Below, in pieces: positions 1 to 38,791 of a stretch of DNA of 64,000 nucleotides. Under the pieces are notes generated by a model. That model ran no database searches. It saw only the letters and a program-made list of their open reading frames with translations, and had not been told where the DNA came from. Position 1 is the stretch's first letter; the number at the start of each line of letters is the position of its first letter. The DNA is taken from contig NW_003314331.1 in NCBI RefSeq assembly GCF_000143415.4, positions 168,244-232,243 on the forward strand. The letters run 5' to 3'. This DNA is from Selaginella moellendorffii. Lineage: Eukaryota; Plantae; Lycopodiophyta. Made by a program: the position numbers and the translations under genes.

Positions 1-150
1 GAATGCTGCGTGCTAGCGCGCAACCAACAATTGGAAAACTAGAGAAAGTTCTTTATTGCTATTCTCCTCGTATGGTTGAACGGTGTGTAAGTTGTTGACT
101 AGCAAAAGCCCTGCTGGTGTAATCCATAAAATTTGTAAGTTTAGGGTTTG

Positions 151-843
151 ATGGAACAAGGCGATGAGAATTAGAAGGGTGTGGATGAGTTTAATATTAC
201 TATTAACAGTAACTCAGTTTATGAGTGAAGTTATGAGAACTTTGACTGTATTACTAATGATTCTTGATTATAATATAATTTTGGGTTCACTTTGGATACA
301 TAAACACTACTTAGAGTTAGACTGCAATAGCATAATAAATACTTTAACATTTGAGGACTACATATTGCCTCATGGGTGATTGCAACTTATCTAAGTCTAG
401 AAAATACATGAGAATAAATCAACATATACATACTGTGGGAGAATCAATGATCAGAAAATCAGAATTGAAATAGATAATGGTTGTGCAAGTTCTGGAATAC
501 TTATCGGGAAACTCGGGGTTAAAGTAGTTCACGATTCCAAGTATTTTGCAGAAAGACTAACTCCATAAGTTCAAATGAAAGTTATGGAATTGGTATGTTA
601 TAATTAAACTTTTTAGAAAGAAGAAATTTTATTGGTCTAGAAGATTATAGAGAAACCATATTTCTTGGGATTGACTGGCTTCATAATCACTCAGCAATAA
701 TTAACTACAGGAATCATATTGTTACTTTTATATCCAAAGAGTTGGATTGTTGGTATAGATTTCAATACCCATCTGGTATATATGAAGCAAGTAAAGATAG
801 ATTTGGCAAAGAGATGAGTAGTTTGTGTTGGTGCTCATTTTGA
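151..843 (+). pseudogene. Decayed inverted paralog of the tandem retropepsin-like protease gene
   Basis: Same start context (ttagggtttgATG) as the minus-strand gene at 3512. Fragments translate as ILDYNIILGSLWIHKHYLELDC, GRINDQKIRIEIDNG and IFLGIDWLHNHSAIINYRNHIVTF...SLCWCSF*. Frameshifts and deletions break the frame. Confidence 0.8.
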
Positions 844-1739
844 CCACAAATTTAATAAATACTTTTTTAGCACAGTCCATTTTGTTTGGTTTGTTTTGCA
901 TTACCAGATTATGGTCTTTTCATGCCTTTCCATTGTTGGTAATTCTTTTGAAGCACTATGAAAAGCAAGGGTGCAAGATGATACATTAATTATGGGAAGT
1001 TAACGACAAGTTATATATGTAATTTGCTTTAGTATATGTGAAAGCTACCACAAAGGTGAAATATACACGTTAGCTAGTAACTTGTTTTGGTATGTACATA
1101 GTATAATTCTGCCTCCTTGATCAAGTTATGATCAAGTTACGATGGAGCCAGAGATCACAAATCAGAGGTAACACTTAAGTAGTTTAGTAATTTTCAAAAT
1201 AATGGTGCATGCCATATATAGACATGTATTTATTCCAACTCATAAGTTTGTATTTTATACATTTAGAAAAAAAGAAAACTATGTAGGAAAATTTGGATAA
1301 ATTTTTGTCATAAGAAATACTCAATGAAATATTATAGTTGTTTCAAAGTCATTTTACTCTAATCTATGTTGGTGCTTAGTGTTAGACAATTTTAATAAAT
1401 AATTTCAATTAAATATACCATGAATATCCAATAATATTTCAATCCAATGCTAAATAAAACACTAATAAAAATAACAATAATGTTAATATAAATAAGATAT
1501 ATAGGCACCTGGCGTTTAATTTGGGTAATATAAATGAAACCATAATTGTTTCAAATTACAAAATGAATAATCTTGTTTAATAGTGAGTATTATTTATAAC
1601 TATAATATTATTTGGAAAATATAAATAATCATTCTCTTTCTGTTAAACTTTATACATATGTATAAATATATATGTTATATTTTTTAGTGAATAATTTATT
1701 TGTACTTTTAAATTTATCTAAATTTTTTGTTTTCATAAA

Positions 1740-2345
1740 CAAACCTGTAGAAAGGTAGTGGATATATCTAAAATATGCTTGGATATTTTAAGATATTTTC
1801 TAACAGTTGTTATTCATTTGAATTAATCTGTAACTTTCTTAAACACTTCTTAATATATTCTAGTTTATTCTACATTCAAATGGTTGATATTAAATAAGAT
1901 TAATCTTGTGTCTATAAATTATCAATATCTTTATAATTATAAACGTTTCTTTGACCAAATGGATTAATAAATTACTATTAAGCAAATTAAGTATTATTGC
2001 ATGCAACGTGCACCAAATTATTTGTTTGCTTAACCAAACCTATAAGGGGATAGTGATTATACCTAGAATATGCTTGGATATTCTAGGATATTCTACCATC
2101 TAACAGTTGTTATTCATTTAGACTAATCTTGTATCTCTAATTTATAAATATGTTTTTAGATTATAAATTTTTCTAAACACTTTCTAGTATATTCTAGTTT
2201 ATTCTACTATGATTAATCTTGTGTTTATAAATTATCAACATGTTTATAATTATGAACTTTAATTGATCAATTGGATTAATTTATAGAAATAACACTACTA
2301 TTAAACAAACTAAGCATTAAATGTAGCAATGTGTAGCAAATTATA
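1740..2345. repeat. Two tandem diverged copies of an AT-rich ~290-bp repeat
   Basis: Core tatgcttggatatt...taacagttgttattcattt...aaacactt...tattctagtttattctac occurs at ~1745-2020 and ~2040-2345. Related copies lie at 24040-24645, 35636-36241 and 53765-54060. Confidence 0.75.
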
Positions 2346-2409
2346 TTTACTTATGATAATATTTATTCAAACAGAATCAAAATATAAAACAATTTATGTT
2401 ATGACTCAT

Positions 2410-2640
2410 GTCCAGAGAGGTATATGTCCACGAGAGAGGTCCCCTTGGTCCACAAAAGCCAGAGCTCAAGCATGCACGGCTTTGCCTTTAGAACTCAAAA
2501 ACTCCAAGCTTAACAATGTATTGGTCAACAATCTGATCCTGTGCAGTAAGAATTGTGATGTGATTTGGAGAACCATTCTTGTCCATCCTAAAGAATTGCT
2601 CCAGAGCTTGCTTGCCTTTGCCATAACCAAGACTGAGGCC
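2410..2640 (-). pseudogene. Degenerate PPR gene fragment forming the 3' end of the protease ORF
   Basis: Alternative frame LSLGYGKGKQALEQFFRMDKNGSPNHITIL aligns with LTLGYAQNGKGEQALEIFFSMDENGCAPDRVTVL of the PPR at 7458-8519. Nucleotide similarity to ~7530-7805. Confidence 0.8.
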
Positions 2641-3512
2641 CTTTTTTTTTGGTGGCACCAACATAAACTATCTGTCTCAGTAACAAATCTATCTTTACTG
2701 ACTTCAAATACACCATTTGGATATTGAAGTCTATACCAGCAACCCAATTCACTAGATTTAAAAGTAACAATATGATTCCTGAAGTCAATTATTGCTGAGT
2801 GCTTCTTAAGCCAATTCATCCCCAAAAATATGGTATTTATATTCTCTTTTATACCAATAAAATCTGTACTTTCTGAAAAGCTTCCCATTTTATAAGTTAA
2901 ATTCTCAATTCCATAACCATCTTTCATTTGCACATCTGCAGTTAATCTTTTTGTAAAATACTTGTAATCACGAATTGCTTTGAGCCCAAGTTTCTTGAGA
3001 AGTTGAAGTGATATAGCTGACCAATCAGAACCATTATCAAATACAAATGTGATGTGATGATCATTGATTCTCCCACTATATTTTGCATAATGAAAAGTAG
3101 TACATATATGTTGATTTATTCTCTTGTATTTTCTGCACTTATATAATTGGTAGTGATCATCAAGGGCACCATCAATCTCCTTGAGGCAATATATAGAATT
3201 ATTGACCTCAAAAGTTAAACTGTTTATAGTGCCACTGCAGTCTAACTCTAAGCAATGTTGATGTATCCAAGGTGAACCCAAAATTATATCATGATCAAGA
3301 ATCAATGGTTTTACAGTCAAACTTGTTTTAAATTCACAATCCTCCACCATAAACTTGAAATCTTTAACTTGTGAATTACTGTCCACAGTAATATTGAATT
3401 CATCTACTAATTTCTGTGAGATAATATCGCTGTCACAACCAGAATCCCAAAAAACATTGATTTTCCTCTCCAACCCATGATCCCCATATAGCCTTCCAAA
3501 AGTTTCTGCCAT
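2466..3512 (-). CDS. Intronless protein with two tandem retropepsin-like (Ty3/gypsy-type) aspartic protease domains and a PPR-derived C-terminal tail, copy 1
   Basis: 348-aa ORF from the ATG at 3512. Domain 1 has VFWDSGCDSDIIS...DIILGSPW and domain 2 has FVFDNGSDWSAIS...IFLGMNWLKKHSAIIDF, both matching the retropepsin D[ST]G + ILG..WL pattern (second motif is DNG). TATAAAT-like and telo-box motifs lie just upstream. Confidence 0.75.
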   Translation of the reverse strand: MAETFGRLYGDHGLERKINVFWDSGCDSDIISQKLVDEFNITVDSNSQVKDFKFMVEDCEFKTSLTVKPLILDHDIILGSPWIHQHCLELDCSGTINSLTFEVNNSIYCLKEIDGALDDHYQLYKCRKYKRINQHICTTFHYAKYSGRINDHHITFVFDNGSDWSAISLQLLKKLGLKAIRDYKYFTKRLTADVQMKDGYGIENLTYKMGSFSESTDFIGIKENINTIFLGMNWLKKHSAIIDFRNHIVTFKSSELGCWYRLQYPNGVFEVSKDRFVTETDSLCWCHQKKRASVLVMAKASKLWSNSLGWTRMVLQITSQFLLHRIRLLTNTLLSLEFLSSKGKAVHA

Positions 3513-4309
3513 CAAACCCTAAATTCCCAAAATCCTAGAGTGTGGGAATTTATAAGCCGTCAACTCTTTCCCTTTTATTTGTTACGTGTTCAACCCTTTG
3601 AGCTCGAGAACATCCTCTTGTTAGCAACCAAGTGAACATCGATGTCCTTGTTGCGCCAAAAAGTAACCTCATCACCGAGACCGAGTGTTTCCAGTGTCCG
3701 CAAACCTGGAGATCACAGGATCATTTCTTTTGCTGTCAATGTTTTTACCTCGTTCTTCCATTTTCCTAACTTCCACTGGCTACGTTGATCCAAAGCACAC
3801 CATCATCCACGTTCAAGCGCTCTCCTTCCTGTCGTGTAAGATGCAAATTCATGGATTAAACAAAGTTTCTACAAGACAAGTCACGCAAATTATCCAGACA
3901 ACATGGCATTTTAAACCTTTTGGACAGCCAGAATAAGGGAAGCTCATTCGACACACGAAAAGTATGCAAGCCAAGCAAAACAGAAGAAAAACGAGAGGAA
4001 ACACGAGCTTTTGTGGCTCTACCAACATGAGTGACAAATCCATGGTAAGCTTGCGGAGCTGCTTGTTTAACAAGGCCACTGCTGGTTGGAAGGCATGCTG
4101 AGCGAGAAAATGATGAACATTGGGGGCCAATGGGACCAGAAACTTCCATGCTTTGCTGTAGGATTACGCAACGATTACATACCTTTAAACCGCTTCCCCT
4201 CTCCTTGCTTTATCCTTGTTCTTCGCTGTTCTTGCTTGTGTTCTGCTCGTTTCTCTTGAGTCCCCATGCCTTCCTGTTAAAAAAAGCATTCCCACAACTG
4301 TTTCCCACG

Positions 4310-4585
4310 ATGTTGTAAATCCGACTGACCTCGGGCATAGATGTTGGACGTGAGAGAGTACGCAGAGCCTGTTCCGTCGTCGAGCTTGAGAACCGACTTG
4401 AAGGCCATCCAGCCAAGCTCCACATCTCTCCACTTGAGGCACGAACTTAAGAATACACCAACGCGTCCGCCTTGCAAGGCCACGCTCTTTGAGCGCCTCG
4501 TTTTGAGCGAGAGAACTTCCCACCGATGCCTCTGTATCCAGCCATCGACCATCTAAAGCCTGCCCGGAATCCTCTCTATCAAGCT
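4310..4585 (-). pseudogene. Internally deleted PPR remnant (E-domain end joined to an upstream PPR piece)
   Basis: FLSSCLKWRDVELGWMAFKSVLKLDDGTGSAYSLTSNIYA is E-motif-like. Sequence matching ~6990 is joined directly to sequence matching ~8390. Repeated at ~26620-26895 and ~38215-38490. Confidence 0.7.
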
Positions 4586-4919
4586 CTTGGTTTTTTCTGC
4601 GTTTTCTTCTGTGGCATAAGATACAAATGGGACCAACCTTTGTTTCCATCAAGGACAGATTATTAGTAAGAAATGATAAAGCGAGCTCATATTTTTCATA
4701 CCTCGAGCCTGACCAGTTGGATATTCTAGGATATTCTACCATCTAACAGTACTATTAAACAAACTAAGCATTGAATGTAGCAATGTGTAGCAAAGTATTT
4801 CTACTTATGATAATATTTATTCAAACAGAATCAAAATATAAAACAATTTATGTTATGACACATGTCCAGAGAGGTATATGTCCATGAGAGAGGTCCCCTT
4901 GGTCCACAAAAGCCAGAGC

Positions 4920-5965
4920 TCAAGCATGCACGGCTTTGCCTTTAGAACTCAAAAACTCCAAGCTTAACAATGTATTGGTCAACAATCTGATCCTGTGCAG
5001 TAAGAATTGTGATGTGATTTGGAGAACCATTCTTGTCCATCCTAAAGAATTGCTCCAGAGCTTGCTTGCCTTTGCCATAACCAAGACTGAGGCCCTTTTT
5101 TTTTGGTGGCACCAACATAAACTATCTGTCTCAGTAACAAATCTATCTTTACTGACTTCAAATACACCATTTGGATATTGAAGTCTATACCAGCAACCCA
5201 ATTCACTAGATTTAAAAGTAACAATATGATTCCTGAAGTCAATTATTGCTGAGTGCTTCTTAAGCCAATTCATCCCCAAAAATATGGTATCTATATTCTC
5301 TTTTATACCAATAAAATCTGTACTTTCTGAAAAGCTTCCCATTTTATACGTTAAATTCTCAATTCCATAACCATCTTTCATTTGCACATCTGCAGTTAAT
5401 CTTTTTGTAAAATACTTGTAATCACGAATTGCTTTGAGCCCAAGTTTCTTGAGAAGTTGAAGTGTTATAGCTGACCAATCAGAACCATTATCAAATGCAA
5501 TTGTGATGTGATGATCATTGATTCTCCCACTGTATTCTGCATAATGAAAAGTAGTACATATATGTTGATTTATTTTCTTGTATTTTTTGGACTTAGATAA
5601 TTGGTAGTGATCCTTGAGGGCACCATCAACCTCTCTGAGGCAATATATANNNNNNNNNNNNNNNNNNNNNNNNNNNNNNNNNNNNNNNNNNNNNNNNNNN
5701 NNNNNNNNNNNNNNNNNNNNNNNNNNNNNNNNNNNNNNNNNNNNNNNNNNNNNNNNNNATGGTTTTACTGTCAGACTTGTTTTAAATTCACAATCCTCCA
5801 CCATAAACTTGAAATCTTTAACTTGTGAATTACTGTCCACAGTAATATTGAATCATCTACTAATTTCTGTGAGATAATATCACGGTCATAACCAGAATCC
5901 CAAAAAACATTGATTTTCCTCTCCAACCCATGATCCCCAGATAGCCTTCCAAAAGTTTCTGCCAT
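4920..5965 (-). pseudogene. Tandem retropepsin-like protease gene, copy 2 (1-bp frameshift, assembly gap)
   Basis: Near-identical to 2466-3512. ttgaatcatc at ~5850 versus ttgaattcatc splits the ORF into 5771-5968 and 4920-5840. The 109-N gap at 5650-5758 equals the length of the missing homologous segment. Confidence 0.7.
5650..5758. other. Assembly gap (further gaps at 30450-30549 and 32493-32592)
   Basis: Runs of N, all inside the repeat array. Confidence 0.99.
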
Positions 5966-6759
5966 CAAACCCTAAATTCCCAAAATCCTAGAGTGTGGGA
6001 ATTTATAAGCCGTCAACTCTTTCCCTTTTATTTGTTGCGTGTTCAACCCTACATCACAGCCAAGTCAAAAAGTTACTACACCACCAAAACTGAGTTTTTT
6101 CACCGTATCCGCAAACCTGGATCAAAAAGCTTTCTTTCGCTGTCAATGTTTTCACCTCGTTCTTCCATTTTTCTAACTTCCACTGGCTACGTTGATCCAA
6201 AGCACACCATCATCCACGTTCAAGCGCTCTCCTTCCTGTCGCAAATTCATGGATTGAACAAAGTTTGTACAAGCCAAGTGACGCAAATTTTACAAAAAAC
6301 CAGACAACATGTCATTTTAAGCCTTTTGGACAGCCACTTCAAGAACTCACTCGCAAGAAGGGAAGCTCATTCGACACACGAAAAGTATGCAAGCCAAGCA
6401 AGACAGAAGAAAAACGAGAGGAAACACGAGCGTTTGTGGCTCTACCAACATGAGTGACATATCCATGGTAAGCTTGCGGAGCTGCTTGTTTAACAAGGCC
6501 ACTGCTGGTTGGAAGGTCACAAAGGCATGTTGAGCGAGAAAATGATAAACATCGGGGGCCAATGGGACCAGAAACTTCCATGCTTTGCTGTAGGATTAGG
6601 CAACGATTACATACCTTTAAACCGCTTCCCCTCTCCTTGCTTTATCCTTGTTCTTCGCTGTTCTTCGCTTGTGTTCTGTTCCTTTCTCTTGAGTCCCCAT
6701 GCCTTCCTGTTAAAAGAAGCATTAAATCGTTCCAACAACTGTTTCCTATGATGTTGGAG

Positions 6760-8872
6760 TTGTAAATCCGACTGACCTCGGGCATAGATGTTGGACGTGA
6801 GAGAGTACGCAGAGCCTGTTCCATCGTCGAGCTTGAGAACCGACTTGAAGGCCATCCTGCCAAGCTCCACATTTCTCCACTTGAGGCACGAACTTAAGAA
6901 TGCCATCCACACCACCGCGTCCACCTTGCAAGGCCACGCTCTTTGAGCGCCTCGTTTTGAGAGAAAGAACTTCCCACCGATGCCTCTGTATCCAATCCAG
7001 CACTGCAAGCTTGTACGTGAATCTGCTGCCCGAAGTCCAGTGCTGCAAGGCTCAGCGCAGGCTTTGAGAGCAGCAACGTACGTCCGGTTACAAGCTTTTC
7101 TCGTGCAGCAACCGAGTGTAGAACTCCAGAGCTCGCTCGGGTTCTCCAAACCGACTATATCCCAAGATCAAGGGGCCTTTGATGCTGTGAAGACTTCCGC
7201 CGTGCTTTGACACTTGGTATACATATCCACCGAAAAGTAGTCATCCAGTTCGCAAATCCTTGCGGCTTGCAAGTGGAGAGCTCTGCCTTTCTCCAGCTAT
7301 TTCTTCACAAGCTTGCGGTCTCCATTCTCTGCTAGAGTCGCAACAGCCTTAAATGCAGCAGTAGCAGTGACATGATCTGCCTTAACACCTTCCTCTTGCA
7401 TGCTTTCGAACGATTGTAAGACGAGCTTGTGCTGGCCGCCGCAAGCATACCCCAGGATTATCCCCGTCCAAGTCGCACCACCATATCTTGGAAAACCACC
7501 CAAGCATCCACCATGCCTCCACACTTGGCGTACATGTCAACGAGAGCATTATGAACCGAGAGGTCTTCTCCGTCCACAAAAGCGAGAGCTCGAGCATGCA
7601 CGGCCTTGCCTCTCTGCAAAGCCCGAAGCTTAACGACGCCTCCGTCGACAATCTGGCCCTGTTCCTTCTCAGCCAAGGTGACACAGGCCTTTAGTGCAGC
7701 AAGAACTGTGACACGATCTGGAGCGCAACCATTCTCGTCCATGCTAAAGAATATCTCAAGAGCTTGCTCGCCTTTGCCGTTCTGAGCATAACCAAGAGTG
7801 AGGCAGTTCCAAGAAACCACGTCTGGACGTTCAATACTGTCGAAGAAACTGCGAGACTCCACCATGCTCCCACAGTTGGCATAGAACTCCACAAGTGTGT
7901 TGGTCACTAAGATGTTTGAATAGTGCTCACCAGCTTCCAAGCGAACGGCCCTTCCTTTTTCGAAGCTCTGAATCTTCAAGACTTCCGTTTCTTCTTCACC
8001 ATAAACAACTGATCGATCCATCGATGGGGGAACAAACATGCCACGAATGCGTGCCGGGGCATGGGCAAGTTCCTCGTCCGCAAGACGGCAACAAGCTTTC
8101 AGCGCTGCGATGAAAGTTAAAGCATCCGGTGGAGTGTCTCCACGACGCATTCGAGCATAGATATCGAGAGCTTCACCACCCTCGCCGCTGCTGGCATACC
8201 CGAGAATCATGCAGTTCCATGTCACCACACTACGATGGCTCATTCCTTCGAAAACTCGACGAGCCTCTGTCAAGCTCCCACATTTTGCGTAAAGATCAAT
8301 CAAGGTGCTCGCGACGAAGAGATCCGAGTCTAAGCCAAGTTTTACTGCTTTCCTGTGAATCTCCCTGCTCCTCTCTAAGAATACCACCCGTTGACCATCC
8401 AAAGCCTGCCCGGAATCCTTCTCTATCAAGCTGGAACAAGCCTTGAGAGCACCAGGAACTGATACTCGATCCGGTTTGTACCCTTCGTCTCCCAGAGGAG
8501 CAAACAACTGTAGAGCCATTTCACCATTTCCACTCTGTGCATATCATATCCCTGTACGATCGAATTCCAGGAGACAACATCGCGATGCGGCATGCTGTCA
8601 AATGTTCCACGAGCATCTATCATGCTTCCGCATTTCGCGTACAGATCAAGCAGGATGTTGGCGACGATAATGTTTGAGAAGTCACCTGTCTCGGAAACAT
8701 CCCTGTTCATTCTCCTGCCTAGTTGTAGATCTCTCATGCTTCTACATACCTTGAGAGCACCAACAACAATGCCAATGGCTGGTTTCAATCCCTGACGTTG
8801 CATTCGTCTGTACACTTCATTTGAAAGACCCTGAGGTTTCTGCAGAAGTGGACCAACCTTCGCTTCCATCAA
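6760..8872 (-). pseudogene. PLS-class PPR (E-subgroup) gene, frameshifted
   Basis: Repeated LIDLYAKCGS..ARRVF..M..RSVVTWN motifs are split across ORFs 8426-8872, 7458-8519 and 7297-7524. E-motif VVWMAFLSSCLKWRNVELGRMAF...AYSLTSNIYA is near the 3' end. Several frameshifts and stops. Confidence 0.85.
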
Positions 8873-10405: not shown

Positions 10406-13358
10406 ATGGAATCATCCCATTCATTCAATAGCTACAGCCTCCTTATCTCTTCCTTGCTCTTGGCACTCTTCTTTTCATGCATTGCAACTCAATGTTCAGA
10501 TGATCCAAAGGTGTACATTGTGTACATGGGTGCTGCTGATGAGCATCACAGCCACTTGCTGTCTAGCCACCACGCACAAATGCTCGCATCTGTCTCCAAC
10601 AGGTGAAATCAGTCACAATGCATCCAAATGCCCAGCATATAAAATATCTATAGATTCTATAGCTGTTTGTGTTCTTTTGTGTTCTAATTATTATTTGCTT
10701 TTTTGTATTGTGCTGTGGCAGGAGTGTGGAATCAGCTATGGAAACTATTGTCCACAGCTACACCCGAGCCATCAATGGCTTTGCCGCAAAGATGCTCCCC
10801 AGTCAAGCATCTATGCTACAACGTAAATTCCACCACTTTCTCTGCTGTTTCATAACACATACATACACTGAAATTTCACATTTCATATGGTTTTCTCCAT
10901 GAACTATATAGAGATGCCGGGCGTGGTTTCCGTGTTTGAGGACTACACAGTATCCCTCCAGACAACCCGTTCTATAAACTTCATAGGGCTGGAGGACGCA
11001 TCCGGAAACACCGCAGCAAACTCGCTATGGAAGAAAACAATGGGCGAAAACATGATAATTGGCGTACTGGACTCGGGTATATGCCAATCCCCGATTCGAA
11101 TCTTTCTTTAAATCTCCCGCATTTTCTTCTAGGTGTCTGGCCAGAGTCGGCGAGCTTCAGCGACGCCGGGCTGCCGGCTTCCCTTCCTGCGAAGTGGCAC
11201 GGCAGCTGTGCGTCGAGCGCTTCCTTCACATGCAACAGGTAACGCGGATTAGATCTCTCGATCGATCGTTTCATCGAGTCGACGTAGGGATTGCTTCTTT
11301 TGTATTGCTGCTGAAGATTTCGCTGATGGCGCTTGCAGGAAAGTAATTGGCGCGCGGTACTATGGCTTTTCCGGCGGCAGACCCCTGAATCCTCGCGATG
11401 AAACTGGGCATGGATCTCATGTCTCCTCCATAGCAGCGGGAGCTCGTGTGCCGGGCGTTGACGACTTAGGGCTCGCCAGAGGCACCGCAAAGGGCGTCGC
11501 GCCCCAGGCTCGAATTGCCGTGTACAAGATCTGCTGGGCGGTGAAGTGCGCGGGAGCCGATGTTCTCAAGGGCTGGGACGATGCGATTGGCGATGGCGTG
11601 GACGTGATCAATTACTCGGTGGGAAGCTCAAATAGTCCCTACTGGTCTGACGTTGCCTCCATCGGTGGCTTCCATGCCGTGCGGAAAGGGGTCGTGGTGG
11701 TCGCAGCTGCTGCAAATGGTGGCATCGGTTGTGTTGTACAGAACACTGCGCCGTGGGTGACGACGGTCGCTGCGAGCACGATCGATCGACGCTTCCCGAG
11801 TAACGTCGTCCTGGGAGATGGTTCATTATACCAAGTAAGTTCTCTCCGCGAATTTTTCTTTCTTTTGCTCACTTCTTGTTCAGGGATCAAGCATCAACAA
11901 TTTTAGTCTCGGCAATAGTTTCTATCCTCTGGTGAATGGAAGGGACATCCCTGCGCCCACGACATCACCCGAAAGGCAAGCTTGTATTGTTACTCTTTCT
12001 TGCTTGACTGGTTTTTCTCTTTCTCTCGTTGTGCAGTGCTATGGGCTGCTCGCCTGGAGCTCTTGATCCTGCCAAAGCCCAGGGAAAGATAGTTCTTTGC
12101 GGCCCTCCATCCGTGGATTTCAAAGATATCGCTGATGGATTGAAGGCTATTGGTGCAGTTGGGTTTATTATGGGAAACGATGCAGATGGCAAGGAGAGAT
12201 TGCTGTCACTCAGATTCACGATGCCTGCTACTGAAGTTGGAAACACAGCTGCAAATTCTATTTCTTCCTACATCAAGTCAAGCAGGTAAATAAGTTTTGC
12301 TTTGAAAATTCGATTACTCGATCACGAGGTCTCTTGTAGGAATCCAACCGCAAAGATTATACCGCCAACAACAGTGATTAATCAGAAGCCATCGCCCATG
12401 ATGGGAATCTTCTCTTGTAAAGGTCCCAACCCTGTTGTCTCAGACATTCTCAAGGTCTGTGCCATGCAGATTGTATATGTTCAGTGATTAACGGTGTTTG
12501 TGCGAGTGGAAAAACAGCCAGACGTAACAGCTCCAGGCGTGGACATCCTTGCCGCATGGTCAGAAGCAGCTGATAAGCCACCTCTCAAGTATAAGTTCGC
12601 CAGTGGAACATCAATGGCCAGTCCCCATGTTGCAGGCTTAAGCACACTTCTCAAATCCTTGCATTCTGATTGGAGTCCAGCAGCGATCAAGTCTGCGATC
12701 ATGACCACAGGTATCTTAAAAGCTGCCGAGATTTTTTAGCATTGTAAACTTACAGTTCTAATCCATCACCACAGCTTACACGCAAGACAACACCGGGAAG
12801 ACAATTCTCGACGGTGACTATGACGTCGCTGGTCCCTTCAACTATGGATCAGGACACATCAATCCGGTTGCAGCAGCGGATCCGGGGCTTGTTTACGATG
12901 CAGGAAAGCAGGACTACGTCGCTTTCTTGTGCAACATTGGCTTCTCGGCAGGACAGATCCAAGCTATGACTGGAGAACCTGGTAACTGTCCTGCCACCAG
13001 AGGCCGAGGCAGCGACTTAAACTACCCGTCAGTGACGCTCACCAATCTGGCCAGAGGGGCAGCAGTGACGAGAACTCTCACCAGTGTCAGCGATTCGCCA
13101 AGCACGTATAGCATTGGTATAACTCCACCGAGCGGGATCAGTGTTACTGCCAATCCAACGAGCTTGACGTTCAGCAAGAAGGGGGAACAAAAGACGTTCA
13201 CGCTCAACTTCGTTGTGAACTATGATTTCCTGCCTCGACAGTACGTGTATGGTGAGTATGTGTGGTATGACAACACGCACACTGTTCGCAGCCCGATTGT
13301 GGTCAATGCGGTGAGTCGCCTTGCAATCGGGGAAGAGAAATTGGTTTCTGAGATTTAA
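10406..13358 (+). CDS. Subtilisin-like serine protease (S8A subtilase: signal peptide, I9 prodomain, PA and Fn3-like domains), multi-exon
   Basis: Catalytic triad motifs [14 protein letters not shown] and [12 protein letters not shown] are present, along with [37 protein letters not shown] and DLNYPS. Short introns. An alternative last exon (intron 13311-13397) would end at 13439. Confidence 0.92.
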
Positions 13359-20450: not shown

Positions 20451-21335
20451 AGTAACCGCGCGAACTTAACTTAGCTTTGCTGGCGCCGCCTTGTCTAGAC
20501 ACTAGAAAACGGAGGACATGCCTCGTAGTGAACTGAAGCCAATCCGGCAGCCAGATTGCGAGAAGGCTGGTAGACCGCTTAAACCGAATCGCCACGAGGA
20601 GTTTGCGGGAACCAAGGCTTAAGCACTTCCATAGGAGTTCTTGACAGAGAGATCAGGTGTCATGCTGCCAGGCTGCTAGGATTGTCTTCCAGACAACCTC
20701 TACACCCAAGACGTTTGATCGGCTTGGATCGAACGTAACAAGAAGAATACTCCAGGATTTTATGTGATCCAACACCTCCAGATGGTCAATGTGATCTTTC
20801 TTTCAGTAAGATATTTTTCTTCACTGGCTAGACTAGGCTCTCGCAACAATGGGGCGATCCGATGCTCGAAGAGGCTGACCGACGCAAATCCGCCGCCCCT
20901 ATCTTCCATCGGATTAAGCTCTCTGTGCGACCGACGATGAGAATGGGAGCTCGAGAATGAGTCCAGTGTCAAGGTACGAGCTTGACCCCAGGGCAAGCTT
21001 TTCTACAATCGCGTTGGAACCTTCGTTCGAGAAAAATCTCGAGGTATGGAGACAGAGCAATTTCACCGCTAACTAAGGTTTGCGCCTAGATCAAACTATT
21101 CATAGCAAGCTCTTGTATGATTCCAGATCAAGTCCAATCTCGCCGAGAAACATTGACGAACTGCCGAGTTTTCTGTATCTCCGGAAGTTTACGAGGCAAA
21201 CAGTTTTGTTTTAAATTTCAAATGAACGAATATACTTCGACTTGAGATGGCGGCGGGACATTTCCAGGTTTAACAACTAACTGCGAGTGGCAGCAGCTCC
21301 GGCAGCCTCGGTGGTAGCGCGAGCATGATCCGGCC

Positions 21336-22066
21336 ATGGAAGCTCTCAATGGCGTCAAGAAGAGGCATTTCAGGGCAGAGGCTTTCCAGTGGCCCTTCTC
21401 GACCAAGCGCAAGAAGATCTCCAGGGACATCAATGTCGCTACTCCTTCTCCTCCTCCTTTACCTCCTCACCCTTCCTCACTCCTCCTCCCTTGCCCCCGG
21501 TACCAAACTTTCTCCGTGCGCTCCAGGCTAATGCTCTTCGGACAATGTCGGTGAATGGGAAGGGCTTCCTATCGAATCCTTGGTCGAACAGGGCAGCTTG
21601 GTCCAGGGTCCAGAGCACGCTCGGGTCGAAGAAGGATCATGGTGGGGATTTGATGAACAAGAAGAGGCAGCTGGAGCTGTGGGACTTCGTGGGGTTCTCT
21701 CGTGAGAAGTTAAAGCTTCTCAATGAGATTGAGGCGCTCATCGACTCGGAGGAGAATGCTTTGAACATGGAAGCTTCTGCTAAGGTTGGTTGAAGGCTCC
21801 TTCTTTCTTGAGTTTAGACCATCGTTTTATTTCTTCTTTCTTCTTTATAGGCCGCGGAAGGACGTCTTCGAAGCTTGCTGGATATCTGCGTATGCTCTCA
21901 ATGCCAGGAGAATATAGAGAACAGGATAGCTCTACCGAAAAGTAAAGAGAGAAGGAGAGGCGCTTCGTTCTGGGAAATGTGAAAGAAGCTATGGAGCGTG
22001 ACCGGGTTGCACTTGACAACTTTCTGCAGAAGCAGAGGCTCAAGCATGAAGCGTCTAAGCAGAAAC
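21336..22066 (+). pseudogene. Second, internally deleted and frameshifted 5' copy of the coiled-coil gene
   Basis: MEALNGVKKRHFRAEAFQWPFS with several deletions relative to 42262-43240. Fused at the 3' end to a weak PPR-like remnant. Repeated at 32932-33662. Confidence 0.8.
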
Positions 22067-22444
22067 TTAAACCCGAGAGGCTATTCGCGACGTATACGAA
22101 TCGTGGCCAGAGCAAGCTGGTGGACTCGAGGAGCTTTGAGCGACGTTGGAACACGATCGAGGCATATCCCGGAATGATCATCATGGAGGCGCTTGAAAAT
22201 TTTTGGAGCTCGTGCCCGAGTGTAACGGACTAATTTTTCCGATGCCAGAGAAAGATTGCATGTACTGGTGGTTTCTTAAGGTAAATTAGGGTACGTTCTT
22301 TGAATGCTGCGTGCTGCCAACCAACAATTGGAAAACTCGAGAAAGTTCTTTATTGCTATTCTCCTCGTATGGTGGAACCATGTGTAAGTTGTTGACTAGC
22401 AAAAGCCCTGCTGGTGAAATCCATAAAATTTGTAAGTTTAGGGT

Positions 22445-23142
22445 TTGATAGCAAAAGGCTTGAAAGATGAGAAGTTGGTGGATGAGTTTAATATTACTAT
22501 TAACAGTAACTCAAAGTTTATGAGTGAAGTTATGAGAACTTTGACTGTATTACTAATGATTCTTGATTATAATATAATTTTGGGTTCACTTTGGATACAT
22601 AAACACTACTTAGAGTTAGACTGCAGTGGCATAATAAATACTTTAACATTTGAGGACTACATATTGCCTCATGGGTGATTGCAACTTATCTAAGTCTAGA
22701 AAATACAAGAGAATAAATCAACATATACATGCTGTGGGAGAATCAATGATCAGAAAATCAGAATTGAAATAGATAATGGTTGTGCAAGTTCTGGAATACT
22801 TATCGGGAAACTCGGGGTTAAAGTAGTTCACGATTCCAAGTATTTTGCAGAAAGACTAACTCCATAAGTTCAAATGAAAGTTATGGAATTGGTATGTTAT
22901 AATTAAACTTTTTAGAAAGAAGAAATTTTATTGGTCTAGAAGATTATAGAGAAACCATATTTCTTGGGATTGACTGGCTTCATAATCACTCAGCAATAAT
23001 TAACTACAGGAATCATATTGTTACTTTTATATCCAAAGAGTTGGATTGTTGGTATAGATTTCAATACCCATCTGGTATATATGAAGCAAGTAAAGATAGA
23101 TTTGGCAAAGAGATGAGTAGTTTGTGTTGGTGCTCATTTTGA
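22445..23142 (+). pseudogene. Decayed inverted retropepsin paralog (unit 2)
   Basis: EKLVDEFNITINSNSKFM...ILDYNIILGSLW, ending LCWCSF*. Near-identical to 151-843. Confidence 0.8.
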
Positions 23143-24765: not shown

Positions 24766-25812
24766 TCAAGCATGCACGGCTTTGCCTTTAGAACTCAAAA
24801 ACTCCAAGCTTAACAATGTATTGGTCAACAATCTGATCCTGTGCAGTAAGAATTGTGATGTGATTTGGAGAACCATTCTTATCCATCCTAAAGAATTGCT
24901 CCAGAGCTTGCTTGCCTTTGCCATAACCAAAACTGAGGCCCTTTTTTTTTGGTGGCACCAACATAAACTATCTGTCTCTGTAACAAATCTATCTTTACTG
25001 ACTTCAAATACACCATTTGGATATTGAAGTCTATACCAGCAACCCAATTCACTAGATTTAAAAGTAACAATATGATTCCTGAAGTCAATTATTGCTGAGT
25101 GCTTCTTAAGCCAATTCATCCCCAAAAATATGGTATCTATATTCTCTTTTATACCAATAAAATCTGTACTTTCTGAAAAGCTTCCCATTTTATACGTTAA
25201 ATTCTCAATTCCATAACCATCTTTCATTTGCACATCTGCAGTTAATCTTTTTGTAAAATACTTGTAATCACGAATTGCTTTGAGCCCAAGTTTCTTGAGA
25301 AGTTGAAGTGTTATAGCTGACCAATCAGAACCATTATCAAATGCAATTGTGATGTGATGATCATTGATTCTCCCACTGTATTCTGCATAATGAAAAGTAG
25401 TACATATATGTTGATTTATTTTCTTGTATTTTCTGCACTTATATAATTGGTAGTGATCATCAAGGGCACCATCAATCTCCTTGAGGCAATATATAGAATT
25501 ATTGACCTCAAAAGTTAAACTGTTTATAGTGCCACTGCAGTCTAACTCTAAGCAATGTTGATGTATCCAAGGTGAACCCAAAATTATATCATGATCAAGA
25601 ATCAATGGTTTTACAGTCAAACTTGTTCTAAATTCACAATCCTCCACCATAAACTTGAAATCTTTAACTTGTGAATTACTGTCCACAGTAATATTGAATT
25701 CATCTACTAATTTCTGTGAGATAATATCGCTGTCACAACCAGAATCCCAAAAAACATTGATTTTCCTCTCCAACCCATGATCCCCATATAGCCTTCCAAA
25801 AGTTTCTGCCAT
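24766..25812 (-). CDS. Tandem retropepsin-like protease gene, copy 3
   Basis: Open 348-aa ORF with DSG and DNG motifs. A few amino-acid differences from copy 1. Confidence 0.75.
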   Translation of the reverse strand: MAETFGRLYGDHGLERKINVFWDSGCDSDIISQKLVDEFNITVDSNSQVKDFKFMVEDCEFRTSLTVKPLILDHDIILGSPWIHQHCLELDCSGTINSLTFEVNNSIYCLKEIDGALDDHYQLYKCRKYKKINQHICTTFHYAEYSGRINDHHITIAFDNGSDWSAITLQLLKKLGLKAIRDYKYFTKRLTADVQMKDGYGIENLTYKMGSFSESTDFIGIKENIDTIFLGMNWLKKHSAIIDFRNHIVTFKSSELGCWYRLQYPNGVFEVSKDRFVTETDSLCWCHQKKRASVLVMAKASKLWSNSLGWIRMVLQITSQFLLHRIRLLTNTLLSLEFLSSKGKAVHA

Positions 25813-27195
25813 CAAACCCTAAATTCCCAAAATCCTAGAGTGTGGGAATTTATAAGCCGTCAACTCTTTCCCTTTTATTTGTTACGTGTTCAACCCTTTG
25901 AGCTCGAGAACATCCTCTTGTTAGCAACCAAGTGAACATCGATGTCCTTGTTGCGCCAAAAAGTAACCTCATCACCGAGACCGAGTGTTTCCAGTGTCCG
26001 CAAACCTGGAGATCACAGGATCATTTCTTTTGCTGTCAATGTTTTTACCTCGTTCTTCCATTTTCCTAACTTCCACTGGCTACGTTGATCCAAAGCACAC
26101 CATCATCCACGTTCAAGCGCTCTCCTTCCTGTCGTGTAAGATGCAAATTCATGGATTAAACAAAGTTTCTACAAGACAAGTCACGCAAATTATCCAGACA
26201 ACATGGCATTTTAAACCTTTTGGACAGCCAGAATAAGGGAAGCTCATTCGACACACGAAAAGTATGCAAGCCAAGCAAAACAGAAGAAAAACGAGAGGAA
26301 ACACGAGCTTTTGTGGCTCTACCAACATGAGTGACAAATCCATGGTAAGCTTGCGGAGCTGCTTGTTTAACAAGGCCACTGCTGGTTGGAAGGCATGCTG
26401 AGCGAGAAAATGATGAACATTGGGGGCCAATGGGACCAGAAACTTCCATGCTTTGCTGTAGGATTACGCAACGATTACATACCTTTAAACCGCTTCCCCT
26501 CTCCTTGCTTTATCCTTGTTCTTCGCTGTTCTTGCTTGTGTTCTGCTCGTTTCTCTTGAGTCCCCATGCCTTCCTGTTAAAAAAAGCATTAAATCATTCC
26601 CACAACTGTTTCCCACGATGTTGTAAATCCGACTGACCTCGGGCATAGATGTTGGACGTGAGAGAGTACGCAGAGCCTGTTCCGTCGTCGAGCTTGAGAA
26701 CCGACTTGAAGGCCATCCAGCCAAGCTCCACATCTCTCCACTTGAGGCACGAACTTAAGAATACACCAACGCGTCCGCCTTGCAAGGCCACGCTCTTTGA
26801 GCGCCTCGTTTTGAGCGAGAGAACTTCCCACCGATGCCTCTGTATCCAGCCATCGACCATCTAAAGCCTGCCCGGAATCCTCTCTATCAAGCTCTTGGTT
26901 TTTTCTGCGTTTTCTTCTGTGGCATAAGATACAAATGGGACCAACCTTTGTTTCCATCAAGGACAGATTATTAGTAAGAAATGATAAAGCGAGCTCATAT
27001 TTTTCATACCTCGAGCCTGACCAGTTTGCCGCTGCTAAAAAACCTGCAACGTTTCAAGTTCCTTCTCCAGCCATTGGAATGCAGCAAGATCGCTTGACTT
27101 ATCCCTCGACAAGCACCAGCTCTACGTCAATATCTCTGCAAGAAAATATATAAAAATCACCTGGATGCTAGAAACGAATAGCCAGATACCTCTCT

Positions 27196-34040: not shown

Positions 34041-34738
34041 TTGATAGCAAAAGGCTTGAAAGATGAGAAGTTGGTGGATGAGTTTAATATTACTATTAAC
34101 AGTAACTCAAAGTTTATGAGTGAAGTTATGAGAACTTTGACTGTATTACTAATGATTCTTGATTATAATATAATTTTGGGTTCACTTTGGATACATAAAC
34201 ACTACTTAGAGTTAGACTGCAGTGGCATAATAAATACTTTAACATTTGAGGACTACATATTGCCTCATGGGTGATTGCAACTTATCTAAGTCTAGAAAAT
34301 ACAAGAGAATAAATCAACATATACATACTGTGGGAGAATCAATGATCAGAAAATCAGAATTGAAATAGATAATGGTTGTGCAAGTTCTGGAATACTTATC
34401 GGGAAACTCGGGGTTAAAGTAGTTCACGATTCCAAGTATTTTGCAGAAAGACTAACTCCATAAGTTCAAATGAAAGTTATGGAATTGGTATGTTATAATT
34501 AAACTTTTTAGAAAGAAGAAATTTTATTGGTCTAGAAGATTATAGAGAAACCATATTTCTTGGGATTGACTGGCTTCATAATCACTCAGCAATAATTAAC
34601 TACAGGAATCATATTGTTACTTTTATATCCAAAGAGTTGGATTGTTGGTATAGATTTCAATACCCATCTGGTATATATGAAGCAAGTAAAGATAGATTTG
34701 GCAAAGAGATGAGTAGTTTGTGTTGGTGCTCATTTTGA
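34041..34738 (+). pseudogene. Decayed inverted retropepsin paralog (unit 3)
   Basis: Near-identical to 22445-23142. Confidence 0.8.
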
Positions 34739-36361: not shown

Positions 36362-37408
36362 TCAAGCATGCACGGCTTTGCCTTTAGAACTCAAAAACTC
36401 CAAGCTTAACAATGTATTGGTCAACAATCTGATCCTGTGCAGTAAGAATTGTGATGTGATTTGGAGAACCATTCTTGTCCATCCTAAAGAATTGCTCCAG
36501 AGCTTGCTTGCCTTTGCCATAACCAAGACTGAGGCCCTTTTTTTTTGGTGGCACCAACATAAACTATCTGTCTCAGTAACAAATCTATCTTTACTGACTT
36601 CAAATACACCATTTGGATATTGAAGTCTATACCAGCAACCCAATTCACTAGATTTAAAAGTAACAATATGATTCCTGAAGTCAATTATTGCTGAGTGCTT
36701 CTTAAGCCAATTCATCCCCAAAAATATGGTATCTATATTCTCTTTTATACCAATAAAATCTGTACTTTCTGAAAAGCTTCCCATTTTATACGTTAAATTC
36801 TCAATTCCATAACCATCTTTCATTTGCACATCTGCAGTTAATCTTTTTGTAAAATACTTGTAATCACGAATTGCTTTGAGCCCAAGTTTCTTGAGAAGTT
36901 GAAGTGTTATAGCTGACCAATCAGAACCATTATCAAATGCAATTGTGATGTGATGATCATTGATTCTCCCACTGTATTCTGCATAATGAAAAGTAGTACA
37001 TATATGTTGATTTATTTTCTTGTATTTTCTGCACTTATATAATTGGTAGTGATCATCAAGGGTACCATCAATCTCCTTGAGGCAATATATAGAATTATTG
37101 ACCTCAAAAGTTAAACTGTTTATAGTGCCACTGCAGTCTAACTCTAAGCAATGTTGATGTATCCAAGGTGAACCCAAAATTATATCATGATCAAGAATCA
37201 ATGGTTTTACAGTCAAACTTGTTCTAAATTCACAATCCTCCACCATAAACTTGAAATCTTTAACTTGTGAATTACTGTCCACAGTAATATTGAATTCATC
37301 TACTAATTTCTGTGAGATAATATCGCTGTCACAACCAGAATCCCAAAAAACATTGATTTTCCTCTCCAACCCATGATCCCCATATAGCCTTCCAAAAGTT
37401 TCTGCCAT
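36362..37408 (-). CDS. Tandem retropepsin-like protease gene, copy 4
   Basis: Open 348-aa ORF with DSG and DNG motifs. Confidence 0.75.
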   Translation of the reverse strand: MAETFGRLYGDHGLERKINVFWDSGCDSDIISQKLVDEFNITVDSNSQVKDFKFMVEDCEFRTSLTVKPLILDHDIILGSPWIHQHCLELDCSGTINSLTFEVNNSIYCLKEIDGTLDDHYQLYKCRKYKKINQHICTTFHYAEYSGRINDHHITIAFDNGSDWSAITLQLLKKLGLKAIRDYKYFTKRLTADVQMKDGYGIENLTYKMGSFSESTDFIGIKENIDTIFLGMNWLKKHSAIIDFRNHIVTFKSSELGCWYRLQYPNGVFEVSKDRFVTETDSLCWCHQKKRASVLVMAKASKLWSNSLGWTRMVLQITSQFLLHRIRLLTNTLLSLEFLSSKGKAVHA

Positions 37409-38791
37409 CAAACCCTAAATTCCCAAAATCCTAGAGTGTGGGAATTTATAAGCCGTCAACTCTTTCCCTTTTATTTGTTACGTGTTCAACCCTTTGAGCT
37501 CGAGAACATCCTCTTGTTAGCAACCAAGTGAACATCGATGTCCTTGTTGCGCCAAAAAGTAACCTCATCACCGAGACCGAGTGTTTCCAGTGTCCGCAAA
37601 CCTGGAGATCACAGGATCATTTCTTTTGCTGTCAATGTTTTTACCTCGTTCTTCCATTTTCCTAACTTCCACTGGCTACGTTGATCCAAAGCACACCATC
37701 ATCCACGTTCAAGCGCTCTCCTTCCTGTCGTGTAAGATGCAAATTCATGGATTAAACAAAGTTTCTACAAGACAAGTCACGCAAATTATCCAGACAACAT
37801 GGCATTTTAAACCTTTTGGACAGCCAGAATAAGGGAAGCTCATTCGACACACGAAAAGTATGCAAGCCAAGCAAAACAGAAGAAAAACGAGAGGAAACAC
37901 GAGCTTTTGTGGCTCTACCAACATGAGTGACAAATCCATGGTAAGCTTGCGGAGCTGCTTGTTTAACAAGGCCACTGCTGGTTGGAAGGCATGCTGAGCG
38001 AGAAAATGATGAACATTGGGGGCCAATGGGACCAGAAACTTCCATGCTTTGCTGTAGGATTACGCAACGATTACATACCTTTAAACCGCTTCCCCTCTCC
38101 TTGCTTTATCCTTGTTCTTCGCTGTTCTTGCTTGTGTTCTGCTCGTTTCTCTTGAGTCCCCATGCCTTCCTGTTAAAAAAAGCATTAAATCATTCCCACA
38201 ACTGTTTCCCACGATGTTGTAAATCCGACTGACCTCGGGCATAGATGTTGGACGTGAGAGAGTACGCAGAGCCTGTTCCGTCGTCGAGCTTGAGAACCGA
38301 CTTGAAGGCCATCCAGCCAAGCTCCACATCTCTCCACTTGAGGCACGAACTTAAGAATACACCAACGCGTCCGCCTTGCAAGGCCACGCTCTTTGAGCGC
38401 CTCGTTTTGAGCGAGAGAACTTCCCACCGATGCCTCTGTATCCAGCCATCGACCATCTAAAGCCTGCCCGGAATCCTCTCTATCAAGCTCTTGGTTTTTT
38501 CTGCGTTTTCTTCTGTGGCATAAGATACAAATGGGACCAACCTTTGTTTCCATCAAGGACAGATTATTAGTAAGAAATGATAAAGCGAGCTCATATTTTT
38601 CATACCTCGAGCCTGACCAGTTTGCCGCTGCTAAAAAACCTGCAACGTTTCAAGTTCCTTCTCCAGCCATTGGAATGCAGCAAGATCGCTTGACTTATCC
38701 CTCGACAAGCACCAGCTCTACGTCAATATCTCTGCAAGAAAATATATAAAAATCACCTGGATGCTAGAAACGAATAGCCAGATACCTCTCT

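What the first reader, a model, noticed from the sequence alone, without database searches (positions are those of the whole stretch)
2466..3512. Stand-alone single-chain double-retropepsin gene family
Seen: an intronless AT-rich ORF with two successive retropepsin-like domains (WDSGCDSDIIS..IILGSPW; FDNGSDWSAI..IFLGMNWL). There is no gag, RT, integrase or LTR nearby. It is present as three open copies (2466, 24766, 36362), one frameshifted copy (4920) and three older inverted paralogs. The older paralog also has DNG, differs by conservative substitutions, and stops right after domain 2 (LCWCSF*), so the ancestral protein was not a pol polyprotein. Established: retropepsins work as homodimers with one D[ST]G per chain, and pepsins arose by tandem duplication of such a unit. 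Inference: this may be a domesticated, independently evolved bilobed or pseudo-dimeric aspartic protease, or a decoy, in which the DNG lobe has altered catalysis.
Basis: partly seen in the sequence, partly recalled or inferred. Interest (0 to 1): 0.75.

Follow-up and report, generated by a model that had tools for sequence, protein, structure and literature searches.

The report
Silent double-retropepsin ORF in spikemoss
An unannotated reading frame in the spikemoss Selaginella moellendorffii does encode two retrovirus-type protease domains on one chain, but here it is an apparently untranscribed passenger of recent duplications and is more likely a decaying relic than a working gene.

Summary
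The ORF exists: 2466-3515 on the minus strand, 349 codons, far longer than chance. Both halves are retropepsin-like. Lobe 2 (DNG) passes Pfam thresholds. Lobe 1 (DSG, no flap hairpin) fails Pfam but matches a retropepsin profile by hhalign and models as a DDI1-like fold. No gag, RT, integrase or LTR was found.

The "gene family" is weaker than described. The window lies on S. moellendorffii scaffold GL377635.1. The three open copies sit inside 98.8-99.3% identical segmental duplications of a PPR-gene block, and the fourth is a local tandem copy with a frameshift. The "older paralogs" are one decayed pseudogene copied three times.

- All young copies have lost the native stop and read out of frame into a PPR fragment.
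- Differences among them are about neutral (pN/pS about 1).
- A paralogous locus on the same scaffold carries stops and frameshifts.
- Four RNA-like data sets cover the spliced upstream PPR transcript but not the ORF body.
- No full-length relative exists in two very large protein collections.

Only the long open frame (P about 0.04 under neutral drift) and a branch pN/pS of 0.55 hint at past constraint.

The scan has reported similar tandem-retropepsin ORFs on other scaffolds of this genome.

The parts
2466..3515 (-). Open reading frame of 349 codons (TTG at 3513-3515, first ATG at 3510-3512, stop at 2466-2468). This is the tandem retropepsin ORF.
3201..3470 (-). Lobe 1, aa ~16-105. Retropepsin-like, with DSG at 3438-3446 and IILG at aa 77-80. 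It lacks about 18 residues where the flap hairpin would be.
2742..3083 (-). Lobe 2, aa ~145-258. Retropepsin domain above Pfam thresholds, with DNG at 3030-3038 and an FLGMNWL motif. The flap region is present.
2469..2654 (-). Non-native C-terminal tail (aa 288-349). It is read-through, out of frame, into a fragment of a PPR gene after the native stop was lost. GC rises from 0.33 to 0.42 here.
175..843 (+). Older inverted copy, convergent with the ORF. It is a pseudogene with frameshifts and an in-frame stop. It keeps DNG, has lost the DSG region, and ends at the presumed native TGA followed by AATAAA.
844..2289 (.). AT-rich spacer (GC 0.24) between the two convergent copies. It has short internal direct repeats and no ORF of note.
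4920..5968 (-). Local tandem copy (2454-base unit). It has a 1-base deletion at codon 39 (about 5852) and an assembly gap at 5650-5758.
24766..25815 (-). Open copy 2, inside a 98.8% identical segmental duplication of window 1-4718.
36362..37411 (-). Open copy 3, inside a 98.9% identical duplication of window 1-4718 (99.3% identical to the unit holding copy 2).
22474..23142 (+). Duplicate of the old inverted pseudogene.
34070..34738 (+). Duplicate of the old inverted pseudogene.
3357..3827 (-). Terminal exon and 3' UTR of the upstream spliced transcript, which carries a PPR E-motif region. Further exons lie at 4182-4272 and 4329-4639 or beyond. The RNA contigs end at 3357-3554, inside or just before the first 53 codons of the ORF.

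Best explanation
**What it is.** The ORF is a compact, intronless coding unit for a single chain with two retropepsin-type lobes. The N lobe has DSG and no flap. The C lobe has DNG, a flap, and the ILGMDWL-like motif that I recall as typical of Ty3/gypsy-type proteases. The unit once had its own ATG, its own stop and an AATAAA signal.

**Where it sits.** On S. moellendorffii scaffold GL377635.1 it forms a convergent inverted pair inside an AT-rich island embedded in a block of PPR genes.

**What happened to it.**
- The younger arm lost its stop and now runs out of frame into a PPR fragment.
- It was then copied passively, once by a 2.45 kb local tandem duplication and twice by duplications of about 11.6 kb.
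- Since then the copies have drifted neutrally.
- No transcript over the ORF body was found. Transcripts of the upstream PPR-type unit end within its first 160 bases.

**Most likely status.** It is a recently inactivated relic, not a working protease gene.

**If it were translated (inferred, not shown).** The two lobes would pair within one chain like a tethered retropepsin dimer. That would give a cleft with one canonical Asp loop, one Asp-Asn-Gly loop and a single flap.
For: - Both lobes are retropepsin-like.
- The window and the paralogous locus L001 are both on GL377635.1 of GCA_000143415.2.
- The copies lie within duplications that are 98.8-99.3% identical.
- Differences among the open copies are 2-3 synonymous against 7-8 non-synonymous. 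Against the 4920 copy they are 3 against 14, pN/pS 1.07.
- The native stop and AATAAA are kept in the old copies and lost in the young ones. The tail is an out-of-frame PPR reading.
- The L001 paralog, 78% identical in DNA, has 4 stops and at least 3 frameshifts.
- ORF DNA divergence from L001 (22%) is no lower than that of the flanking non-coding DNA (18-28%).
- Four RNA-like runs show spliced GT-AG joints for the upstream unit and zero depth over 100-3333.
- Stops occur in all frames between the last splice site and the ORF's ATG.
- The ORF is not annotated and has no full-length relative among 1.84 billion representative proteins or 5.8 billion clusters.
- GC is 0.33 and GC3 0.28, against 0.49-0.59 and 0.50-0.73 in neighbouring genes.
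Against: - The 292-codon core is still open in three copies. Simulated neutral drift at its lineage-specific divergence (8.3%) leaves it stop-free only 3.8% of the time, and it has no frameshifting indel while the paralog has three.
- pN/pS on its branch is 0.55 (15 synonymous, 35 non-synonymous, no stops). The one-sided binomial p is 0.043, but the branch does not differ from the pseudogene branches (Fisher p 0.32). Some constraint therefore probably acted until fairly recently.
- The RNA evidence comes from assembled contigs of four runs whose RNA label is a guess. Contigs show presence, not absence.
- Tissue- or stress-specific expression was not examined.
Confidence: 0.6

Rival explanations
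1. A working stand-alone gene. It would be a domesticated single-chain pseudo-dimeric aspartic protease, or a catalytically altered decoy, expressed under conditions not sampled here.
For: - The frame is long and open in three copies.
- P(no stop) is about 0.04 under neutrality, and branch pN/pS is 0.55.
- It has its own ATG preceded by a conserved short leader, and the old copies conserve the stop position and AATAAA.
- Both lobes keep Asp and the hydrophobic-hydrophobic-Gly motif.
- Earlier scan notes report transcribed, intron-containing tandem-retropepsin genes elsewhere in this genome (not checked here).
Against: - There are no RNA contigs over the ORF body.
- Recent changes are neutral.
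- The native stop is lost and a 62-residue junk tail is added.
- One recent copy is frameshifted and the paralogous locus is dead.
- Homology between copies starts only about 25 bases upstream of the ATG, so no promoter is evidently shared.
- It is unannotated and has no relatives.
- Its composition is atypical for local genes.
Confidence: 0.12
2. A fragment of the pol region of a Selaginella LTR retrotransposon family that carries several protease domains in tandem. It would have been left behind after the rest of the element was deleted, and never a free-standing gene.
For: - Lobe 2 matches the retrotransposon-type families RVP_2 and gag-asp_proteas and has an ILGMDWL-like motif.
- The best distant hits include a gag-PR-RT polyprotein, P0004.
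- The island is AT-rich and repeat-like.
- An earlier scan note reports spikemoss retrotransposons with three tandem retropepsin-like domains (not checked here).
Against: - No gag, RT, integrase or LTR was found in the window or in L001 near the element.
- Homology among copies begins about 25 bases before a shared ATG and ends about 100 bases after a shared stop with AATAAA. That is the shape of a small gene, not of an internal pol fragment.
- The protein searches found no Selaginella polyprotein at E <= 0.001, though transposon proteins are often missing from gene sets.
Confidence: 0.2
3. A chance ORF or an assembly artefact.
For: Assembly gaps lie inside the repeated block (5650-5758, 30450-30549, 32493-32592). 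Near-identical 11.6 kb units could be collapsed or expanded haplotypes.
Against: - The ORF is more than twice as long as any in 300 shuffles.
- It has significant Pfam domains.
- Independent DNA runs hold the sequence.
- A diverged paralog exists.
Confidence: 0.02

Closest known systems
Retrotransposon and retroviral proteases (retropepsins; Pfam RVP_2 PF08284, gag-asp_proteas PF13975)
   Same: - Lobe 2 passes both Pfam models.
- Both lobes have the Asp loop and the hydrophobic-hydrophobic-Gly motif followed by W/D-W-L.
- The lobe 1 model superposes on retropepsin-fold structures.
   Different: - There are two domains on one chain instead of one domain that homodimerises.
- There is no gag, RT or integrase around it.
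- Lobe 2 has DNG instead of D[TS]G.
- Lobe 1 lacks the flap.
DDI1 / ASPRV1 (SASPase): host-domesticated retropepsin-fold proteases
   Same: - They are the best solved-structure matches: DDI1 and ASPRV1 by sequence for lobe 2 (E 0.04-0.1), and DDI1 by fold for lobe 1 (TM 0.72-0.74).
- Like this ORF, they are free of retroelement genes.
   Different: - Those proteins carry one protease domain and act as homodimers (from my own knowledge).
- DDI1 also has a ubiquitin-like domain (from my own knowledge), and no such Pfam hit appears here.
- They are conserved and expressed. This ORF is neither, as far as tested.
Pepsin family A1
   Same: The concept is the same: two homologous lobes on one chain, each giving one Asp. 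Pepsin is thought to have arisen by duplication and fusion (PMC2761423).
   Different: - There is no Pfam pepsin-family match.
- The lobes are about 90-115 residues, not about 160.
- The second Asp loop is non-canonical.
- Pairing of the lobes is not shown.
Engineered tethered (single-chain) HIV-1 protease dimers
   Same: The layout is the same: two retropepsin units joined by a linker in one polypeptide (from my own knowledge of the protein-engineering literature, not checked here).
   Different: Those are artificial and have identical halves. Here the halves are only about 17-18% identical and asymmetric.
Other tandem-retropepsin ORFs and genes noted by this scan in the same genome (s1-374886, s1-433186, s1-433238, s1-432164, s1-346907)
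   Same: They share the species and the two-lobe layout. Two were likewise judged silent relics. One (s1-346907) has the same 1047-letter length and the same DSG+DNG pattern on another piece of the assembly.
   Different: Their sequences could not be compared here. Two of them are described as intron-containing and transcribed, which this copy is not.

Membership tests
Retropepsin-type aspartic protease domain (clan AA; Pfam RVP_2 / gag-asp_proteas) | Domain model matched above the curated threshold | tested here: met
   Lobe 2 scores gag-asp_proteas 31.0 bits alone (cut-off 28.2) and RVP_2 23.2 bits (cut-off 20.3). Lobe 1 alone scores RVP_2 15 bits, below the cut-off. It is supported only by hhalign (85.5%, E 5.7e-6) and by a model with a borrowed alignment.
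Retropepsin-type aspartic protease domain (clan AA; Pfam RVP_2 / gag-asp_proteas) | Catalytic Asp-Thr/Ser-Gly loop | tested here: inconclusive
   Lobe 1 has D24-S25-G26, which is canonical. Lobe 2 has D160-N161-G162, which is not. One distant relative, P0007, also has DNG.
Retropepsin-type aspartic protease domain (clan AA; Pfam RVP_2 / gag-asp_proteas) | Hydrophobic-hydrophobic-Gly motif near the C-terminal part of the domain | tested here: met
   IILG (aa 77-80) and IFLG (aa 229-232) both fall on the invariant LG columns of the alignments.
Retropepsin-type aspartic protease domain (clan AA; Pfam RVP_2 / gag-asp_proteas) | Flap beta-hairpin over the active site | tested here: inconclusive
   Lobe 2 aligns through the flap region. 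Lobe 1 has a gap of about 18 residues there.
Retropepsin-type aspartic protease domain (clan AA; Pfam RVP_2 / gag-asp_proteas) | Two units pair to form one active site (here within one chain) | tested here: inconclusive
   The full-length AF2 model has pLDDT 45.8, with lobe 1 below 40. The complex test of lobe 1 with lobe 2 gave no verdict.
LTR retrotransposon / retroviral pol polyprotein | Protease flanked by gag, reverse transcriptase, integrase and LTRs | tested here: not met
   - tblastn with a gag-PR-RT polyprotein found nothing.
- No such Pfam family occurs in 21 ORFs scanned.
- The repeats found are the segmental duplications and the inverted gene pair only.
Pepsin family A1 | Match to the pepsin-type domain model, with two lobes of about 160 residues each carrying D[TS]G | tested here: not met
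   No pepsin-family hit appears in Pfam at E up to 10. Foldseek matches to plasmepsins are weak, at E 0.1 or worse and TM 0.42-0.49.
DDI1-like proteins | Ubiquitin-like domain N-terminal to a single retropepsin domain | tested here: not met
   Only protease families are hit, and the chain has two protease lobes.
Expressed protein-coding gene under purifying selection | Transcript over the coding region | tested here: not met
   Depth is zero over 100-3333 in four RNA-like runs that cover 3357-4700 with spliced joints. These are contigs only, so rare RNAs could be missed.
Expressed protein-coding gene under purifying selection | Non-synonymous rate clearly below synonymous rate | tested here: inconclusive
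   Recent copies give pN/pS of about 1. The older branch gives 0.55, not distinguishable from the pseudogene branches at 0.73 and 0.91.

The most novel reading that the evidence does not exclude
Selaginella holds a lineage-specific family of natural single-chain, two-lobed, one-flap retropepsins. That would be an independent replay of the duplication-and-fusion step thought to have produced pepsins. This ORF would be a member that was functional until shortly before the recent duplications, or still is under unsampled conditions.
Probability: 0.2. Interest if true: 0.65.

Novelty: new variant of a known kind. Interest (0 to 1): 0.3.

Why it matters
A natural fused retropepsin dimer would be a living intermediate for the textbook idea that bilobed pepsins arose from a duplicated single-lobe ancestor. 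Its asymmetric lobes (one flap, one non-canonical Asp loop) would show what is tolerated right after fusion. At this locus, however, the evidence points to a silent, drifting copy. Its value is mainly as one data point for a genome-wide study of this spikemoss family, and as a warning that copy number inside segmental duplications is not evidence of selection.

Tried and rejected
- **Complex prediction.** The test of lobe 1 against lobe 2 gave no verdict (score 0.07, mark 0.34). It is not evidence either way.
- **Full-length AF2 model.** With a shallow alignment the mean pLDDT was 45.8 and lobe 1 was unmodelled, so the geometry of the two Asp residues could not be read.
- **BLASTP of lobe 1 against lobe 2.** E was 0.07 at 17% identity, so the lobes are not a recent internal duplication.
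- **PDB sequence search.** Only weak lobe 2 hits to DDI1 and ASPRV1 appeared (E 0.04-0.1).
- **ESM Atlas feature search.** It returned only generic single-domain retropepsin clusters.
- **Exact-product look-up of the ORF.** It is not on record.
- **Literature searches.** Searches for tandem or single-chain retropepsins, and for retropepsin with Selaginella, found nothing describing this layout.
- **Mutation spectrum of the three branches.** It shows only a general drift toward AT, with no clear signature.
- **Chance ORF.** Rejected.
- **ORF as a continuation of the upstream coding exons.** Rejected, because there are stops in all frames in 3516-3827.

Full report
**1. What is in the sequence**

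The minus strand of 2466-3515 carries a 349-codon frame, with the first ATG at 3510-3512. It is not a chance frame. The longest stop-free run in 300 shuffles of 1-4000 was 159 codons, against 350 observed.

Pfam matches four retropepsin-type families on the whole protein, led by gag-asp_proteas (38.7 bits) and RVP_2 (31.9 bits).

- **Second half (aa ~145-258).** Scanned alone it passes three curated cut-offs.
- **First half.** Scanned alone it gives only a sub-threshold RVP_2 hit (15 bits, E 0.022) on the ILGSPW part.

I therefore tested lobe 1 separately.
- Against a profile built from lobe 2 and six distant retropepsin domains (A2), hhalign gives 85.5% probability and E 5.7e-6 over 86 columns. 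D24-S25-G26 falls on the D[TS]G column and I78-L79-G80 on the invariant LG column.
- The alignment shows a gap of about 18 residues where the flap hairpin lies.
- An AF2 model of lobe 1 with that borrowed alignment has mean pLDDT 77.9.
- Foldseek places the model on DDI1 retroviral-protease-like domains, at TM 0.72-0.74 and E 2e-5.
- The alignment was borrowed from retropepsins, so the model leans toward that fold. Together with hhalign it is reasonable, but not independent, support.

Lobe 2 has D160-N161-G162 in place of D[TS]G. One distant relative, P0007, has the same DNG.

The two lobes are only about 17% identical to each other, so the fusion is old.

**2. Copies and their history**

Placing the window: exact-product look-up of the DnaJ/DUF3444 gene at 47252-49465 puts it on S. 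moellendorffii scaffold GL377635.1 (GCA_000143415.2). Window base 1 is about record base 168,244.

Self-comparison shows how the copies relate.
- The copies at 24766 and 36362 lie inside duplications of window 1-4718 that are 98.8-98.9% identical.
- Units two and three are 99.3% identical to each other over 8.8 kb.
- The copy at 4920 belongs to a local 2454-base tandem duplication. It has a 1-base deletion at codon 39 and an N gap.
- All four young copies therefore descend from one.

The "three older inverted paralogs" are likewise one sequence (175-843, plus strand) copied with the block.
- It is 72% identical in DNA and about 50% in protein.
- It has many indels that are not multiples of three and an in-frame TAA.
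- It has no recognisable lobe 1 Asp loop.
- With the young copy it forms a convergent inverted pair around a 1.4-1.6 kb spacer of 24% GC.

**3. The native end of the protein**

The old copy, and an independent partial copy in the paralogous locus L001, both stop at a TGA two codons after LCWC. Both have AATAAA about 20 bases later.

In all four young copies about ten bases including that stop are missing. The frame then runs on for 62 codons.
- That stretch (2433-2639) is a fragment of a PPR gene.
- In the PPR frame it matches the window's own PPR ORF at E 6e-13. In the ORF's frame it does not.
- The present C-terminus is therefore junk, acquired before the recent duplications.

Homology among copies starts only about 25 bases upstream of the ATG, within a TTTAGGGTTT motif.

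**4. A paralogous locus**

The only database protein with real similarity is SELMODRAFT_424830 (P0001). Its last 48 residues are a piece of this element.

Its locus, L001, lies on the same scaffold at 269.7-291.5 kb in inverted orientation. It is collinear with the window: the PPR gene is 90-94% identical and the other flanks 72-82%.

The element in L001 is 78% identical in DNA. It has four stop codons and at least three frameshifting indels.

The arrangement is mirrored. The near-full copy sits where the window has the decayed one, which fits an inversion across the inverted pair.

**5. Selection**

- **Among the open copies:** 2-3 synonymous against 7-8 non-synonymous changes in the core.
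- **Copy 36362 against copy 4920:** 3 against 14, pN/pS 1.07.
- **Older changes,** polarised with the old copy as outgroup:

| Branch | Synonymous | Non-synonymous | Stop-creating | pN/pS |
|---|---|---|---|---|
| Young copy | 15 | 35 | 0 | 0.55 |
| L001 copy | 9 | 25 | 3 | 0.73 |
| Old copy | 14 | 53 | 1 | 0.91 |

- The young branch departs from neutrality only marginally (binomial p 0.043). It is not different from the two pseudogene branches (Fisher p 0.32).
- Simulated neutral drift at the branch's 8.3% divergence leaves the 292 codons stop-free in 3.8% of trials. The branch also has no frameshifting indel.
- I read this as some past maintenance of the frame, followed by recent neutrality.

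**6. Expression**

No run on record as RNA holds the stretch. Six runs guessed to be RNA hold small shares of it.

I laid contigs of four of them, from four studies, on 100-4700.
- They show a spliced minus-strand transcript. Its joints are 3827/4182 and 4272/4329, both GT..AG on the minus strand.
- The contigs end at 3357, 3440, 3488 and 3554.
- Depth is zero from 100 to 3333 in all four runs.

The upstream exons include a PPR E-motif region. All three frames have stops between the last splice site and the ORF's ATG. So the ORF start lies in the 3' UTR of another unit and the body is not seen as RNA. Contigs cannot prove absence.

**7. Relatives and annotation**

- HMMER against 1.84 billion representative proteins gave seven hits at E <= 0.001. 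Six are single-domain matches to lobe 2 at 26-33% identity.
- The word-indexed search of 5.8 billion clusters gave only P0001.
- No gene with this product is on record.
- The annotation of the scaffold calls a gene ending just upstream of the third copy (window about 37486). No gene is called over the part of that copy the fetched locus reaches (window 37252-37411).

**8. Context**

The other ORFs of 150 aa or more in the window that have Pfam matches include PPR and E-motif proteins, a subtilase fragment, DnaJ/DUF3444 and FtsZ. None is gag, RT or integrase.

The ORF core has GC 0.33 and GC3 0.28. Neighbouring genes have GC 0.49-0.59 and GC3 0.50-0.73.

**9. Verdict**

The observation of a stand-alone two-lobed retropepsin ORF is right. 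The claim of a multi-copy family under selection is not supported here. The best reading, at about 0.6, is a recently inactivated relic carried along by PPR-block duplications.

A working gene (about 0.12) or a leftover of a multi-protease retrotransposon (about 0.2) remain possible.

The scan has already reported similar ORFs on other pieces of this genome. Two were judged silent relics and two were judged transcribed genes. I used those notes as leads only.

Noticed in passing
window 1-4718, 22302-27026, 33898-38622; 20997-29766 vs 32593-41374: Three near-identical (98.8-99.3%) units of about 11.6 kb hold PPR gene parts and the AT-rich island. Assembly gaps lie inside the block at 30450-30549 and 32493-32592. 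This could be a real young tandem array or an assembly or haplotype artefact.
   Followed up: partly
window 3357-4639 (minus strand): A spliced transcript lies downstream of a PPR E-motif region, with two GT-AG introns (3828-4181, 354 bases; 4273-4328, 56 bases). It is seen in four RNA-like runs. Its 3' end falls in the AT-rich island.
   Followed up: partly
L001 10001-11837 (GL377635.1, SELMODRAFT_424830): The annotated 418-residue hypothetical protein ends with 48 residues that are a fragment of the decayed retropepsin element. The last exon of this gene model is probably a mis-annotation.
   Followed up: partly
window 2290-4540 vs 4744-6994: Identity between the two local tandem units changes along their length. 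There are no differences in codons 129-292 of the ORF, about 6% in codons 10-128, and 13% upstream (3305-4540 vs 5759-6994). This looks like a gene-conversion tract.
   Followed up: partly
window 3516-3530, 155-169; L001 about 11595-11610: A telomere-repeat-like TTTAGGGTTT motif sits immediately 5' of the start codon in all copies, old and young.
   Followed up: no
L001 11582-12949 vs window 175-3538: The convergent inverted pair is mirrored between the two paralogous loci. The better-preserved arm is on opposite sides, which suggests an inversion by recombination across the inverted arms.
   Followed up: no
window 1678-2260: Short direct repeats of 42-120 bases, spaced about 220-335 bases apart, lie in the 24% GC spacer.
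   Followed up: no
window 11448-11906 (+): An ORF with a partial subtilase (Peptidase_S8) match is probably an exon of a subtilase gene.
   Followed up: no
The look-up of sequencing runs, run X8: A 2024 run labelled as a different organism (organism B) holds 47% of the sampled words of 2300-3700. This points to a very close relative or a labelling issue.
   Followed up: no
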